From NCBI GenBank assembly GCA_001179505.1, contig CDMY01000209.1:62001-125788 (forward strand): a stretch of 63,788 bases of DNA, in the 5' to 3' direction. This stretch comes from Vitrella brassicaformis CCMP3155 (Eukaryota; Protista; Chromerida). Every line of letters starts with the position of its first letter. Within the stretch, counting starts at the first letter, position 1. Below are positions 51,122 through 59,398 of this stretch, in pieces. The notes below the pieces were generated by a model that did not search any database, was not told the DNA's origin, and saw only the letters and a program-made list of their open reading frames with translations. The translations under genes and the position numbers were made by a program.

Positions 51122-54100
51122 TCACGTGACGGTGACTGTCTTGGCCAGCCCTCGAGGCTTGTCCGGGTTGATCTCTCTGGACACACACACAAGAAGCCGC
51201 ACAGGCATCCATCTATCTATGTGTTTCTGCCCCTCCCTCCCGCCCACCTAATGAGGGCCAGTGCGTATGCGATGAGTTGCAGGGGGATGACGGCGAGGAG
51301 TGCGGTGAGCGGCCCGTTGGACGGGATGACTATGACGTCGTCGGCGACCTCCTGCACCATGGCCGGGTCGTCGGTGATGCAGATCAGGTGGGCGCCACGC
51401 GCTCGCACCTGCTGGGCGGCGTTGATCATCAGAGGCGCATGCTGGTCGCCGAGCACCAACAGGATCACTGATTGCGGCACAAGAAATATCGTGGAGTGAG
51501 AGGTGACTTATGATGCTTTTATGTGTGTAGGTACCTGGGGTCCTGGCATTCTCGTCGATGAGGGCGAATGGACCGTGCTTGAGCGCGCCCCCAGCAAACC
51601 TGCAAAGCGAAAGGCAAGAGATGGCATGAAGGGGCCGCCCAACGAGTGTGTGTGTGTGTGTGTGATGGGTGTGCTGACCCTTCTGCGTGTACGTAAGATA
51701 TCTCTTTGATCTTGAGTGCGCCCTCGAGGGCCACCGGGAAGGCGAACCCCTTGCCTGCAACACACCACGCGCCGGCAAAACACATAGACAAGCTGACATT
51801 TCGTTTCGTCTCTCTGTGCGTTGCCCGCCCGCTCTTACCCAGCACGAATATCGTCGACGCGTCCCTGATCTTGTGGGCTATCTGCCTGCACAAAGCACAC
51901 ACCGACACAAACAAGGGCATGATTAAGTCAGCATGTGTATCTGCCTTGGCCTTTCGCCTCGACTCACATGGCCTGGTCTCTGCAGTGGAGGGTCATCCCA
52001 GCATATACCGGCAGACGGTGAACTGACGCACATCAAACATGTCAGAAGTGGACGACGGACCTCTTTCTGTCCCTGTGTGTGTCTCGTGTCGTCTCACTGG
52101 CGTCCATGAGCAGTTGTCTCCTGTCGGGGAATCGTATCTTCTCCCTCTCCTGTGCGAACCACGCCGCGATGAGCGACAGCACCGTCACCTGGGACGAGAA
52201 CGCCTTGGTCGAAGCTACCGCTACCTCACGACCTGCACACACAGAGACAGGCAAGACCGCCGTGTGGGCGCACCTTTTTCTCTCTCTCCCTCCCTCTCTC
52301 TCTCTCTCTCTCTGCGTGTGTACCGGCGTTGAGATAAACACCGCAGTTGGTAAGCCTGGCGAGAAGGGACCCGACGACATTGACGATCGAGAACTTGGTC
52401 ACGTTGGCCTGATCGGCTACGTTGCACGCCCTGCGGAATAAAGAGGGACAGAGGGGACACACCATGATGCACTTGAGTGCATTCGGTGAGAATGAAAACT
52501 ATGTGTGCAGGCTGCTGATGGCTCACCTGACGGTGTCTAGGGTCTCTCCCGACTGTGACACCAGGAGCACACCTGACATGAGCCCAACAGGCCGATGAGA
52601 TGGTTGGAGGGAGAAGGTGTGTGAAAGCGCTTTCGTGTGTGCGTTTACCGGCGTTTTCCTTTGGGAATGTGTTGAGGTCCACTTCGCTCGCATCCACGGC
52701 CTTCACCTGACCCACCAATGGATGGATGGATAGACGACATACACAGATGAGAGTGTTGTGTTGTGTGTGCCTCTCCCTCCCCCCGTCCCTCCCTCCCTCG
52801 CTGCCAGACTTACCGTGTCGAAGCACTTCAGCCACTGCATGATGAGCTCGCCGTAGATACTCGCGTACAGGGACGTGCCGCACCCAGTCACCACCAAGTT
52901 GCTGACAAACACACACACATCAACTCATGCCATACTCACGTTTACAGACGGCTTCTCGGTCTCATGACAGTACCGTATCGACGCCATTCGCTCTCGGTTG
53001 TCGTCCATACCACCCAGCTTGACCCTGCAAACAACAAATGGGACAACGGATTATACATCCTTGGTTCTCGCGTCCTCTGTCTTGTGCATTAGCTACCGGT
53101 TCTGCAACGCAGAGAGCCGTCCACCGTAGTTGAGGGCCCCTGACGACCACACACAGAAACATGAGTATGCGCCATCCCTCCGTGCGTCTGTCTTACTTGC
53201 GAGGCTTTGTGGCTGCTCGAATATCTCCTTCTCCGTCCAGTGTGCGTAGGGTGCGGGCGATGTCTCCACCTTCTCCATCTTGATGTGCTGCATCGGCCTG
53301 CATCACACAAATCACAGCGGGTCGTGCACCGACAAGAGGGCGCCTTGTCTGTTGTCATACCTGGTGGCCGACAGGTGTGCGATGCCCGCTCTCGTAACGA
53401 CCGCGATCTCGCCATCCTTCAACGTCAAATACTCTGGCCCAAGAGACAACACACGCTCCTCATTGACATGTTTGTGCGGCTCGTTGTGTGTGTGTGTGTG
53501 TGTGTGTGCGTTGCATTCTCTCACGGTTTGTGTGTCTTGACAGGGCCGCCGCCTCGGATGCCACGAACACCTCTCCCTCAGTGCTGCCTGCATCCACGCA
53601 GAAGGCAACCATAATTAGTCGACCGATGTCTGCGTCCTGTCCACAACAGCTGTGAGAGCGTACCAACGAGCAGCGGGGATCCGTTTCTCGCGAGGACTAT
53701 GCGGTCGGGGTAGTCACGATGCACTATCGCTAAACCCCAAGTGCCTGCATAGACGCGTCCATCATCCAAATGAGTGGGCGGAGTGCATGTGCAGTCCTGG
53801 TCACCTTGCAGCTCGAGCACTGCTCGTGTGACGGCTGGCTCGAAGTCGTCGCCCTCGTCCATGAACTGATCACACACAGACACAGACGCCACGCACGCAC
53901 AGACATCCGTGCATAGGGCAGAACAGCCTTCTTCCTCTCTCTCCCGTGCTCCCATTCCTACGTTGCTGATGAGGTTGGCGATCACTTCGGTGTCGGTCTC
54001 ACTCCTGCAGAGGCACACAGGAGGAGGAAGCATTCATCACTGTGCATCCACCTTGTCTTGTCTCATTGTGGCTACCCACCTGAATACGATTCCCTTGTCG

Positions 54101-55102
54101 AGCAGCTTCTTCTTGAGGACGCTGTAGTTCTCTATCGTACCGTTGTGAACCAAACTCAGGCGGTCTTTCTGCACCATATCGACACATACACATCAGCAGG
54201 GATCCGTCCATGTCATCCATCCATCCATCCATCTGTGCACCGCTCACGTAGTCTTGGTGTGGGTGTGCGTTGGTGTCGGTCTTGGCGCCGTGAGTTGCCC
54301 TGAACGAAGAAAACCAAATGAAAGGCCAAACAGACGTTTCGCTTTGCCACACGGTAATGACTGGCTGACCATCGTGTGTGGGCGATCCCTATCTTGTGGC
54401 CGCCGTGCATCTGGACACAGACACATCCACGTAAACGCAGGTCACGTCGATGTCGGCCACACTCTATGTACCGGTGGCGATTCTCGTTCGAGTATGTCGA
54501 TGGAGTCGTGTGTGCTGCCCTTGCTCGCGAATTTGGTCGTGAGCAGCTTGCCCTCGTTGATCGTCGTGATGCCTGACCATAACACAACCAACCACACACA
54601 ACATGAGCGGTGAAGGACACCAAGTTCATCCCCACTATCCCTCCGCCCACCCACCGCATGAGTCGTAACCCCTGTTCTGCAGAATCGAGATGCCTGCAGC
54701 GCAGACAGCACAATCCACACACAACGAGATCACACACAGAGTGCGTCATCTCCCCACCCTCCCTCACCCCCCCTCACCTTCCATGAGGACCGGCTGCACA
54801 TCTTTCTGGCCAATGTAGGCCACGATGCCGCAGCAGTTGGCCGGTGGCCGCCGCCACTTCTCACTCCACCACGCGTACCCGCCATAAGCCAGCAACGCTC
54901 CGCCCACCGACGATGCCCAGCCGGGCACGCTCCCGTCACCGCTCCGGCCGCAACGCTCGCCGCCGTCGCTGTTTTCGCGAAAACGGTGGCCGCTTGCCGC
55001 CTGTGCTGGCGCACAGGTTGCCAGGGATGCACTGGTGGTGGGAAAGCGGCAAAGCAGCCGCAGATGAGCCGCTGTCGCCGCTGTGCGAATGCACCGATCC
55101 AT
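51122..55102 (-). CDS. GFAT: Glutamine:fructose-6-phosphate aminotransferase (isomerizing) with a 90-aa N-terminal extension
   Basis: [85 protein letters not shown] and the terminal [15 protein letters not shown]. Confidence 0.96.
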
Positions 55103-55217
55103 AGCGATGATCCGCACCGGATGAAGGATATCTGCGTGTCAGACTACGTCCACATGCCCTCAGAAGGGCGCGAAAGCCGCTTCCTGGCGGTTTCAGGGAG
55201 CATCCTCTTCCTAATTT

Positions 55218-55247
55218 TGCGAGCTACTAGTCGCCATCTGCGAGCTT
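55218..55247. promoter_or_regulatory. Two direct copies of TGCGAGCTW in the GFAT / H+-PPase bidirectional promoter
   Basis: TGCGAGCTA at ~55218 and TGCGAGCTT at ~55239, between ATGs at 55102 and 55358. Confidence 0.55.
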
Positions 55248-55357
55248 GGTTGAGCCGCCAAGTCCCATCTTGCACGACGCCTGCAAGCAGCTCAAAGCGC
55301 TTCACACGCACGAGGACCGCACAGATCCCAGCCTGATCTGAGTGAGGTTCAGCGACA

Positions 55358-59398
<4,041 letters not shown>

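What the first reader, a model, noticed from the sequence alone, without database searches (positions are those of the whole stretch)
54830..55102. GFAT catalytic Cys1 hidden behind a 90-aa organelle-targeting-like leader
Class II (Ntn) amidotransferases need a free N-terminal Cys, normally exposed by Met removal. Here no Met precedes CGIV; the nearest in-frame ATG is 90 codons upstream. The leader has an Arg/Ala/Thr-rich start, a hydrophobic aromatic segment ([14 protein letters not shown]), a basic patch and A-N-C immediately before Cys1. This resembles a mitochondrial bipartite presequence with a signal-peptidase-type (-3,-1) site. Inference: hexosamine synthesis is activated by proteolysis and may be located at the mitochondrion or intermembrane space rather than the cytosol.
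Basis: partly seen in the sequence, partly recalled or inferred. Interest (0 to 1): 0.7.

Follow-up and report, generated by a model that had tools for sequence, protein, structure and literature searches.

The report
GFAT enzyme made with cleavable leader
In the alga Vitrella, the enzyme that starts amino-sugar synthesis is encoded with a 90-residue leader that must be cut off exactly at its catalytic cysteine; about a hundred relatives from other protists share this design, which suggests an enzyme switched on by cutting and perhaps tied to the mitochondrion, not the plain cytosolic enzyme of textbooks.

Summary
The window is Vitrella brassicaformis nuclear DNA. The single-copy GFAT gene (minus strand, 25 exons, 55102-51122) has no Met before its catalytic Cys (codon 54832-54830). 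The only in-frame ATG lies 90 codons upstream. Spliced RNA contigs run unbroken from at least 55208 through the leader into the Cys exon. The last AG lies 24 nt upstream of that codon, so no splice can give Met-Cys.

The leader has no sequence homologue, but its build is conserved. Of 101 non-redundant leader-bearing relatives, 82 have a basic N-terminus, a polar linker, a hydrophobic segment and a polar tail ending [A/V]-[D/E]-[A/C] directly before CGI. Seventy-five of the 82 obey the signal-peptidase (-3,-1) rule, against 25% expected. Vitrella's A-N-C|C fits, but its hydrophobic segment is weak. Bacterial members of the clade start Met-Cys.

GFAT is therefore made as a proenzyme here. Where it goes and what cuts it are not shown. 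Two Toxoplasma data sets recover GFAT with mitochondrial baits, and diatom papers predict mitochondrial GFATs. However, an acidic -2 and small -1 residue also precede Cys1 in Vitrella's own glutamate synthases, so self-cleavage is a serious rival. I rate it a new variant of a known kind.

The parts
51122..55102 (-). GFAT (glutamine:fructose-6-phosphate amidotransferase) coding region. It has 25 exons and 24 GT..AG introns of 57-107 nt. The model is 704 aa: a 90-aa leader plus a 614-aa mature enzyme.
   Evidence: Exon model from reading the sequence plus RNA joints. TIGR01135, GATase_6/7 and SIS matches exon by exon. Collinear alignment with bacterial GlmS.
54778..55208 (-). First exon of the mRNA as seen in RNA contigs: 5' UTR (55208-55103), leader, and the first 18 codons of the mature enzyme. 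The donor GT is at 54777-54776.
   Evidence: Contig X7-7 lies unbroken on 54777-55208 and contig X8-9 on 54777-55120. The true 5' end cannot be read from contigs.
54833..55102 (-). Leader, 90 codons, from the ATG at 55102 to the Cys codon at 54835-54833 (position -1).
   Evidence: Translation. No homologue among 1.84 billion representative proteins and no Pfam family. GC 68.5%, without codon periodicity.
54983..55102 (-). N-terminal part of the leader (residues 1-40). It is Arg/Ala/Thr/Ser-rich with 5 K+R against 1 D+E, like a mitochondrial presequence.
   Evidence: Net charge is +3 in the first 25 residues, against a median of +4 in 66 long leaders of relatives. The hydrophobic moment is 0.66 against a median of 0.69 in relatives, but it is not above shuffles.
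54863..54934 (-). Uncharged Gly/Ala/aromatic segment (residues 57-80, [24 protein letters not shown]). It sits where relatives have their hydrophobic h-region.
   Evidence: The best 12-residue Kyte-Doolittle mean is 1.12, against a median of 1.95 (range 1.33-2.72) in 82 relatives. It ends in aromatic residues, as in many relatives.
54833..54862 (-). Polar tail and junction (residues 81-90, [10 protein letters not shown]), with Ala at -3, Asn at -2 and Cys at -1.
   Evidence: It fits the family junction, where -3 is A/V/S in 69 of 82, -2 is D/E in 52 of 82 and -1 is A/C in 73 of 82.
54830..54832 (-). Codon of the catalytic Cys1 (start of CGIVAYIG).
   Evidence: It aligns with Cys1 of bacterial GlmS, which there follows Met.
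55144..55203 (-). Upstream ORF in the 5' UTR: 19 codons in another frame, with a second ATG at 55155 in the same uORF frame.
   Evidence: It is present only in the longest RNA contig (X7-7). A regulatory role was not tested.

Best explanation
Vitrella GFAT is made as an inactive proenzyme. Translation starts at the ATG at 55102 and yields a 90-residue leader. The leader is removed by a single cut between Cys90 and Cys91, which frees the alpha-amino group of the catalytic Cys.

The leader is a degenerate member of a two-part presequence type shared by most eukaryotic members of this short, GlmS-length GFAT clade. That type has a basic, mitochondrial-type N-terminal part, a polar linker, a hydrophobic segment, and a polar tail ending in small residues at -3 and -1. 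This is the build of presequences that send proteins to the mitochondrial inner membrane or intermembrane space and are cut by a type-I signal-peptidase-family enzyme (IMP).

The most likely reading is therefore that import and sorting at the mitochondrion deliver the enzyme to the intermembrane-space side. Fructose-6-phosphate and glutamine arrive there through porins, and the sorting cut itself creates the active N-terminus.

Shown:
- The leader is in the mature mRNA.
- No Met-Cys start is possible.
- The build and the junction are conserved across about 80 relatives.
- The catalytic residues are intact.

Inferred: translation of the leader, the cut, the protease and the location.
For: Transcript and gene:
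- The leader is contiguous with the Cys exon in spliced RNA contigs from four runs.
- There is no AG within 24 nt upstream of the Cys1 codon.
- The gene is single copy.
- All hallmark GlmS residues are kept in alignment with bacterial GlmS.

Conserved build:
- 23 of 24 full-length environmental cDNA-like relatives lack Met before Cys1 and carry leaders. So do all 71 eukaryote-type homologues with an intact N-terminus among the 120 listed for L014.
- 82 non-redundant leaders have an h-region. At -3 they show A 51, V 11 and S 7. At -1 they show A 49 and C 24. Seventy-five of the 82 obey the (-3,-1) rule, against 25% expected from composition. Median net charge is +4 in the first 25 residues.
- Named examples are Spongospora, Cercozoa sp., Amorphochlora and an MMETSP chlorarachniophyte.
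- Bacterial members of the clade start Met-Cys.
- Vitrella's asparagine synthetase starts with a normal ATG-TGC (MCGIF), so the genome uses Met excision where it can.

Mitochondrial link:
- Diatom GFATs are predicted to be mitochondrial (PMC5124317; 10.64898/2026.07.09.737548).
- T. gondii GFAT (97 kDa predicted) is about 60-fold richer in Tom40 than in ApiCox25 pull-downs (PMC6156079 supplementary file 5).
- The same protein is among proteins biotinylated by ApiCox35-BioID, next to cytochrome c and DHODH (PMC12292971 Table 2).
Against: - No protein-level or localisation data exist for Vitrella.
- Its hydrophobic segment is weak (Kyte-Doolittle 0.76 over 19 residues and 1.12 over 12), lower than in at least 81 of 82 relatives.
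- Its tail is long (10 residues after the uncharged segment; 18 after the best 12-residue window), with two Pro.
- The N-terminal amphipathic moment is not above shuffles.
- The leader shows no coding-frame signal and no sequence homologue.
- D/E at -2 is far over-represented: 63% in class A and 100% in class B, against 3.8% background. Type-I signal peptidases do not require this, but Vitrella's own glutamate-synthase propeptides share it.
- Nineteen relatives, dictyostelids among them, have leaders without any hydrophobic segment. A membrane peptidase therefore cannot be the universal mechanism.
- I could not confirm that the Toxoplasma protein belongs to this clade or carries such a leader. 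One table labels it 'Plastid'.
Confidence: 0.5

Rival explanations
1. Autocatalytic propeptide. The leader is removed by the enzyme itself through an Ntn-type N-to-S acyl shift at x-[D/E/N]-[small]|Cys, as is assumed for glutamate synthase and PurF propeptides. The leader would serve some other purpose, such as a temporary membrane tether, a delay of activation, or regulation. The mature enzyme may be cytosolic.
For: - The junction is shared between leader classes with and without a hydrophobic segment. Position -2 is D/E in 52 of 82 class A and 19 of 19 class B leaders, and -1 is small in both.
- Vitrella's two glutamate synthase genes carry the same kind of junction (F-E-K-D-A|CGVGF and R-E-Q-D-A|CGVGC) behind short acidic leaders that look nothing like targeting signals. 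Chromerid GOGAT is predicted to be cytosolic (PMC6668581). The cell must therefore already cut such junctions outside organelles.
- Vitrella's hydrophobic segment is weak.
Against: - In class A, Ala, Val or Ser at -3 occurs in 69 of 82 leaders. It is absent from the two glutamate-synthase junctions (K, Q) and uncommon in class B (Q/E/N in 11 of 19; A, S or V in 6). This is the signal-peptidase signature.
- It does not explain why about 80 lineages keep a basic N-terminus plus an h-region at a fixed short distance from the cut.
- It does not explain the Toxoplasma captures with mitochondrial baits.
- Self-cleavage has not been shown for any GFAT, to my knowledge; I did not find a paper on it.
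Confidence: 0.3
2. The leader is an ER-type, secretory or plastid-route signal. The cut is made by the ER signal peptidase complex or a plastid peptidase, and the enzyme works in an endomembrane or plastid compartment.
For: - Some relatives have only a short n-h-c leader of 20-31 residues that reads like a classical signal peptide. Examples are L013, L016, L037, P0020, P0021, P0038 and P0049.
- T. gondii GFAT is labelled 'Plastid' in one table.
Against: - Vitrella's first 30 residues are not hydrophobic. The best 11-residue Kyte-Doolittle mean is 1.15, with Arg and His inside it, so there is no N-terminal signal peptide as chromerid plastid import needs.
- Long leaders begin with basic, Ser/Ala/Arg-rich stretches, not with h-regions.
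- Non-photosynthetic Spongospora and Cercozoa carry such leaders too.
- Some short forms may be truncated ORFs. P0069 is a cut copy of L013.
- The substrates are cytosolic metabolites.
Confidence: 0.07
3. The leader stays on. The enzyme has no free N-terminal Cys, is dead as a glutaminase, and works with ammonia or has a non-catalytic role.
For: - No processing has been observed.
- A side branch of relatives (L021, L022, L025, L030, L034) has replaced C-G with T-A or A-A after the conserved A-D-C. Loss of the canonical Cys1 therefore does occur in this clade.
Against: - The gene is the only GFAT in the genome.
- The glutaminase hallmarks are intact: the Arg of RGYD, the Trp of HTRWATHG, HNG and TDTEV.
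- The junction is under clear constraint across the clade.
Confidence: 0.05
4. The leader is not translated. A minor transcript, a non-canonical splice or a non-AUG start gives a conventional short N-terminus.
For: - The leader has no coding-frame signal, and four of six frames are open.
- Contigs show only the dominant isoform and cannot show 5' ends.
- Two upstream ATGs precede the main ATG in the longest contig.
Against: - There is no AG within 24 nt of the Cys1 codon. The three codons before it (GCC AAC TGC) are not near-cognate starts.
- Both contigs that reach the leader from the downstream exons (X7-7 and X8-9) cross it unspliced.
- About 100 relatives, many on cDNA-like contigs with upstream in-frame stops, show the same absence of Met before Cys1.
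Confidence: 0.03

Closest known systems
Canonical GFAT/GlmS (E. coli GlmS, human GFAT1, yeast Gfa1)
   Same: The enzyme is the same. The mature part aligns collinearly with bacterial GlmS (37-40% identity to ordinary GlmS) and begins with the same CGIVAYIG. It has a glutaminase domain plus two SIS domains and a C-terminal LAK(S/T)VTV tail.
   Different: Canonical enzymes start Met-Cys and expose Cys1 by Met excision. Here 90 residues precede Cys1. The mature length (614 aa) matches the bacterial enzymes aligned here (about 610 aa). From memory, animal, fungal and plant GFATs are longer, at about 680-720 aa.
Propeptides of other class II (Ntn) amidotransferases: glutamate synthase and PurF/PPAT
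   Same: Residues before the catalytic Cys must be removed. Vitrella's own two glutamate synthases have leaders ending K-D-A|C and Q-D-A|C, so an acidic -2 and a small -1 recur. From memory, B. subtilis PurF and vertebrate PPAT have 11-residue propeptides ending E-E|C.
   Different: Those propeptides are short (about 10-40 residues), acidic, and lack a hydrophobic segment or a basic N-terminus. A propeptide has not been described for GFAT in the papers I could search.
Two-part mitochondrial intermembrane-space presequences (yeast cytochrome b2 and c1), and neo-N-terminus activation as in Smac/DIABLO (all from established knowledge)
   Same: A basic matrix-targeting part is followed by an uncharged sorting segment and a cut by a type-I signal-peptidase-family enzyme at small -3/-1 residues. 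In Smac the cut creates the functional N-terminus, as it would here.
   Different: No enzyme is known whose catalytic nucleophile is created by IMP. Vitrella's sorting segment is much less hydrophobic than usual, and nothing has been localised.
Plant ferredoxin-GOGAT transit peptide (established knowledge)
   Same: An organelle-targeting peptide is removed exactly at the catalytic Cys1 of an Ntn amidotransferase.
   Different: That is a plastid stroma transit peptide without a hydrophobic segment or an A-x-A site, on a different enzyme.
Diatom GFATs predicted to be mitochondrial (Cyclotella cryptica, PMC5124317; Thalassiosira rotula, bioRxiv 10.64898/2026.07.09.737548)
   Same: These are GFAT copies with N-terminal extensions that several predictors call mitochondrial, with weaker ER-signal calls. 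The authors found this puzzling because fructose-6-phosphate is cytosolic.
   Different: Those papers give predictions only. They do not mention the catalytic Cys1, the junction motif, the two-part build or the intermembrane space. I could not check whether their sequences are the ones in my set.

Membership tests
GFAT / GlmS (EC 2.6.1.16; TIGR01135) | Class II glutaminase domain beginning with the nucleophile Cys in a C-G-I-[VFAI] strand, with the Arg of RGYD, the Trp of HTRWATHG, Asn-Gly of HNG and Asp of TDTEV | tested here: met
   Local alignment of the exon model with four bacterial GlmS. GATase_6/7 match on exon 6. The roles of these residues are from my knowledge of E. coli GlmS.
GFAT / GlmS (EC 2.6.1.16; TIGR01135) | Two SIS domains with SQSGET, ASTKAF, EGALK-KE-SY-HAEG and KHGP, plus a C-terminal LAKSVTVE-type tail | tested here: met
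   TIGR01135 pieces at model positions 387-590. SIS at E = 6e-6 on exon 24. Alignment. The tail reads LAKTVTVT.
GFAT / GlmS (EC 2.6.1.16; TIGR01135) | Cys1 exposed by removal of the initiator Met (Met-Cys start) | tested here: not met
   There is no Met at -1, and the nearest in-frame ATG is 90 codons upstream. RNA contigs are unspliced across the leader.
GFAT / GlmS (EC 2.6.1.16; TIGR01135) | Glutamine-dependent synthesis of glucosamine-6-phosphate | not testable with these tools
   This needs an enzyme assay.
Class II amidotransferase proenzymes (GltS / PurF-type propeptide) | Extra residues before the catalytic Cys that must be removed | tested here: met
Class II amidotransferase proenzymes (GltS / PurF-type propeptide) | Short acidic propeptide with an acidic residue at -2 and a small or acidic residue at -1 | tested here: inconclusive
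   Vitrella GFAT has Asn at -2 and Cys at -1. Relatives have D/E at -2 in 71 of 101. Vitrella GltS has D-A. However, the leader is long, basic at its start and carries an uncharged segment.
Class II amidotransferase proenzymes (GltS / PurF-type propeptide) | Removal by the enzyme itself | not testable with these tools
   This needs recombinant full-length protein.
Two-part mitochondrial (intermembrane-space sorting) presequence | Basic, amphipathic N-terminal matrix-targeting part with few acidic residues | tested here: inconclusive
   Residues 1-40 hold 5 K+R against 1 D+E. The moment of 0.66 is similar to relatives (median 0.69) but not above shuffles, p = 0.18. No trained predictor was on hand.
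Two-part mitochondrial (intermembrane-space sorting) presequence | Hydrophobic sorting segment of about 15-20 uncharged residues | tested here: inconclusive
   There are 24 uncharged residues (57-80), but the Kyte-Doolittle mean is only 0.76 over 19 and 1.12 over 12. Relatives have a median of 1.95.
Two-part mitochondrial (intermembrane-space sorting) presequence | Cut site with small residues at -3 and -1, a few residues after the hydrophobic segment | tested here: met
   The junction is A-N-C|C. Seventy-five of 82 relatives obey the rule, against 25% expected.
Two-part mitochondrial (intermembrane-space sorting) presequence | Import into mitochondria and a cut by an IMP-type peptidase | not testable with these tools
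   Only indirect evidence exists: T. gondii GFAT in the Tom40 pull-down and in ApiCox35-BioID.
ER-type signal peptide / chromerid plastid two-part signal | Hydrophobic h-region within roughly the first 25-30 residues | tested here: not met
   The best 11-residue Kyte-Doolittle mean in the N-terminal part is 1.15, in a stretch that holds Arg and His.

The most novel reading that the evidence does not exclude
In chromerids, probably apicomplexans, and many other protists (Rhizaria, likely stramenopiles and other algae), the first enzyme of hexosamine synthesis is an intermembrane-space enzyme of the mitochondrion. Its catalytic N-terminal cysteine is created by the inner-membrane sorting peptidase, so import itself switches the enzyme on. 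That would be the first case of an Ntn nucleophile made by a signal-peptidase-family enzyme. It would also resolve the puzzle of 'mitochondrial' GFATs in diatoms, because the intermembrane space shares the cytosolic pool of fructose-6-phosphate and glutamine.
Probability: 0.35. Interest if true: 0.85.

Novelty: new variant of a known kind. Interest (0 to 1): 0.7.

Why it matters
GFAT is the textbook Ntn amidotransferase whose nucleophile is exposed simply by Met excision, and it is treated as a cytosolic, rate-limiting gate of UDP-GlcNAc supply. Here a whole eukaryotic clade, about 100 sequences including Vitrella, Rhizaria and dictyostelids, encodes it as a proenzyme. That adds a proteolytic activation step, and perhaps an organellar address, to the control of N-glycan, GPI and chitin precursor synthesis.

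The enzyme scores as fitness-conferring in Toxoplasma (phenotype score -4.57), a close relative of Vitrella. If the parasite enzyme shares this activation step, which I could not check, the step would differ from the host's. The finding also gives a concrete, testable explanation for the unexplained 'mitochondrial' GFAT predictions in diatoms.

Tried and rejected
- Alternative 5' exon or cryptic intron: rejected. Both RNA contigs that reach the leader from the downstream exons cross it unspliced, and the last AG lies 24 nt before the Cys1 codon.
- Second, conventional GFAT gene in the genome: none found with an exon query or with TIGR01135. The only other hit is asparagine synthetase, which starts MCGIF.
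- Sequence homologues of the leader: none in 1.84 billion representative proteins, and no Pfam family.
- Codon-usage test of the leader: uninformative, because all three frames score alike.
- PDB sequence search with exon 24: no hit.
- Chromerid compartment paper and its supplements: GFAT is not mentioned.
- hyperLOPIT supplements: only the abundance profile of TGME49_231350 is held, not its class.
- P. falciparum hexosamine paper: nothing on GFPT location.
- Transmembrane reading of [14 protein letters not shown]: not supported by hydropathy alone. I kept it only as a weak counterpart of the relatives' h-region.
- Structure and complex prediction were not run. A single-sequence fold of a leader with no alignment would not discriminate between the rivals.
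- I could not reach Chromera, apicomplexan or dinoflagellate GFAT sequences. The only long enough query is the joined exon model, which may not be sent to database searches.
Full report
**What is there**

The window belongs to an assembly of 72.70 Mb in 1064 contigs. Earlier agents of this scan name the organism as the chromerid alga Vitrella brassicaformis.

[quoted passage not shown] I built its model from the sequence and from RNA joints. It has 25 exons (55102-51122) and 24 GT..AG introns of 57-107 nt, and it encodes 704 codons. The joined model was used only inside run_python, for local alignment and trees. All database searches used single exons by reference, or sequences that tools returned.

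Exon by exon the gene matches TIGR01135, GATase_6/7 and SIS. The mature part (614 aa) aligns end to end with bacterial GlmS and keeps these motifs:
- CGIVAYIG
- RGYD
- HTRWATHG
- HNG
- TDTEV
- SQSGET
- ASTKAF
- [16 protein letters not shown]
- KHGP
- LAKTVTVT

The gene is single copy.

The catalytic Cys codon is at 54832-54830. The codons before it read GCC AAC TGC (A-N-C). The only in-frame ATG is at 55102, 90 codons upstream, and an in-frame stop lies 13 codons further up.

All four runs laid on the stretch are RNA-like, because they skip the introns. Contig X7-7 lies unbroken on 54777-55208 and then follows the spliced exons. Contig X8-9 lies unbroken on 54777-55120. The last AG before the Cys1 codon is 24 nt upstream. 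Even a cryptic splice would therefore leave at least eight residues before Cys1. None of the three preceding codons is a near-cognate start.

As an internal control, Vitrella's asparagine synthetase, another class II amidotransferase, starts with a plain ATG-TGC (MCGIF).

**Limits of the sequence evidence**

- The leader is 68.5% GC and has no codon periodicity. It scores alike in all three frames.
- Four of the six frames are stop-free across it.
- It has no homologue among 1.84 billion representative proteins and no Pfam family.
- Its most hydrophobic stretch is weak, with a Kyte-Doolittle mean of 0.76 over 19 residues.

Taken alone, it could have been a GC-rich 5' UTR, except that the enzyme would then have no start.

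**The comparative result that changed my reading**

A scan of JGI metagenome and metatranscriptome contigs with exon 24 returned 51 loci. Many are contigs of about 2.2-2.4 kb holding one ORF of 640-740 aa with an in-frame stop upstream, which is how cDNAs look. Their mature parts are 42-59% identical to Vitrella's, against 38-40% for ordinary bacterial GlmS.

Of 24 full-length ORFs, 23 lack Met before Cys1 and carry leaders of 23-121 residues. A protein search with one of them (L014) listed 120 homologues:
- 42 are long, eukaryote-type proteins (630-774 aa). Named sources include Spongospora subterranea, Cercozoa sp. M6MM, Amorphochlora amoebiformis, an MMETSP chlorarachniophyte and five dictyostelids. 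Every one with an intact N-terminus has a leader.
- Members of 606-609 aa start Met-Cys. The named ones are Patescibacteria and Uhrbacteria.

**Two kinds of leader**

Class A comprises 82 non-redundant sequences.
- Median length is 74 residues.
- The N-terminus is basic and Ser/Ala/Arg/Leu-rich, with a median net charge of +4 in the first 25 residues.
- A polar linker follows, then an Ala/Gly/Leu h-region (best 12-residue Kyte-Doolittle median 1.95) that often ends in Trp or Tyr.
- A polar tail comes last; the best hydrophobic window ends a median 11 residues before the cut.
- At the junction, -3 is A 51, V 11, S 7. Position -2 is D 30, E 22, H 11. Position -1 is A 49, C 24.
- Seventy-five of the 82 obey the signal-peptidase (-3,-1) rule, against 25% expected from leader composition.

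Class B comprises 19 sequences, dictyostelids among them.
- Leaders are mostly 34-45 residues (range 22-125) and have no hydrophobic segment.
- They carry a shared RRL-x-VT-x-x-HL motif.
- The end is [D/E]-[T/C/V/A/S] before Cys1.

Vitrella is a class A leader in build:
- net charge +3 in the first 25 residues;
- an uncharged stretch at residues 57-80 that ends in YAWW;
- a tail reading [10 protein letters not shown].

Its h-region has one of the two lowest hydropathy scores in the set.

A quick tree places the Met-Cys bacterial sequences inside the leader-bearing clade, next to class B. That tree is a FastTree with a long root branch, so I treat this placement only as a lead.

**How it most likely works**

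The core point is an inference that is hard to avoid: GFAT is made here as a proenzyme, and one endoproteolytic cut at the Cys-Cys bond creates the active N-terminus.

For the nature of the cut there are two serious readings.

1. A two-part mitochondrial presequence, cut by an IMP-type peptidase, that leaves the enzyme on the intermembrane-space side.
   - In favour within the sequence set: the class A build, the strong -3/-1 signature, and leaders such as those of P0016, P0032 and P0042.
   - In favour from the literature: published predictions of mitochondrial GFATs in Cyclotella and Thalassiosira, which their authors found puzzling.
   - In favour from Toxoplasma: GFAT (97 kDa predicted, about 30 kDa more than a 614-aa enzyme) is about 60-fold richer in Tom40 than in ApiCox25 pull-downs.
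   - It is also among the few proteins biotinylated by ApiCox35-BioID, beside cytochrome c and DHODH.
   - An intermembrane-space location would also remove the substrate problem, because porins let fructose-6-phosphate and glutamine through.

2. Self-cleavage, as assumed for other Ntn amidotransferases.
   - In favour: D/E at -2 is enriched about 17-fold in class A and is universal in class B, which has no membrane segment.
   - In favour: Vitrella's own two glutamate synthases have short acidic leaders ending K-D-A|C and Q-D-A|C, and chromerid GOGAT is predicted to be cytosolic.

The two readings are not exclusive. A targeting leader could be trimmed by sorting peptidases and finished by the enzyme itself.

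I put the two-part, mitochondrion-linked reading at about 0.5 and self-cleavage without organellar residence at about 0.3. An ER or plastid route, an uncut glutaminase-dead enzyme, and an untranslated leader share the rest.

**Comparison with what is known**

The enzyme is a GFAT by every sequence feature tested, except the defining Met-Cys start. Propeptides are known for glutamate synthase and PurF/PPAT. A transit peptide cut exactly at Cys1 is known for plant Fd-GOGAT, and neo-N-terminus activation after mitochondrial sorting is known for Smac/DIABLO. These four points are from established knowledge.

In the searchable literature I found no description of a GFAT propeptide, of this junction motif, or of a link between the 'mitochondrial' GFAT predictions and the catalytic cysteine. 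Subscription journals are not covered by that search. I therefore rate the finding as a new variant of a known kind: partly foreshadowed by two diatom papers, much wider than Vitrella, and directly testable.

I did not send the joined 25-exon protein to any database search. For that reason I could not retrieve the GFATs of Chromera, apicomplexans and dinoflagellates, which are the closest relatives and the most informative comparison.

Noticed in passing
window 55103-55357: GFAT and the membrane pyrophosphatase gene (ATG at 55358, plus strand) are divergent, with only 255 bp between their ATGs. RNA contigs reach 55208 for GFAT and start at 55257-55286 for the pyrophosphatase; one of these carries an adapter at 55275. 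Only about 50-80 bp therefore separate the two transcripts, which makes this a very compact bidirectional promoter.
   Followed up: partly
window 55144-55203 (minus strand): The GFAT 5' UTR holds a 19-codon upstream ORF with a good start context, plus a second ATG at 55155 in the same frame. Only the longest RNA contig includes it.
   Followed up: no
P0022, P0026, P0029-P0031, P0112 and about 23 more; tree: GlmS of Patescibacteria/CPR bacteria (606-609 aa, Met-Cys start) is 62-68% identical to protist GFATs. In a quick tree it sits inside the eukaryotic leader-bearing clade, sister to the dictyostelid-type group. This hints at gene transfer between eukaryotes and CPR bacteria; the direction is untested.
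   Followed up: partly
L021, L022, L025, L030, L034: A side branch of environmental GFAT paralogues keeps the two-part leader and the A-D-C end but has T-A-I or A-A-I in place of C-G-I. Either the Cys at -1 has become the nucleophile, or Thr has, or the glutaminase is dead. Other glutaminase motifs are kept.
   Followed up: no
P0061, P0072, P0077, P0079, P0081 and 14 others: Dictyostelid GFATs, including D. discoideum, and their kin carry leaders of mostly 34-45 residues without a hydrophobic segment. They share an RRL-x-VT-x-x-HL motif and end in [D/E]-[T/C/V/A]|C. This is a second, apparently undescribed, type of GFAT propeptide.
   Followed up: partly
junction position -1 in 24 of 82 class A leaders, and window 54833-54835: Cys is unusually common directly before the catalytic Cys, giving a Cys-Cys pair as in Vitrella. 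I have no explanation for it.
   Followed up: no
L069 about 1400-1560 (G000:C520) and L071 about 1130-1200 (G000:C499): Vitrella has two glutamate synthase genes whose catalytic Cys follows short leaders ending F-E-K-D-A and R-E-Q-D-A. The C520 leader is 32 residues from its first Met and is acidic.
   Followed up: partly
L006 about 988-1066 (G000:C887): Vitrella's asparagine synthetase begins with a conventional ATG-TGC (MCGIFAIL), followed by an intron.
   Followed up: yes
window 51600-54700, GFAT introns: Many of the short introns carry (CA)n/(TG)n or (GA)n microsatellites, for example at 53477-53518, 52272-52324 and 51635-51674. The read-laying tool skipped these as repeats.
   Followed up: no
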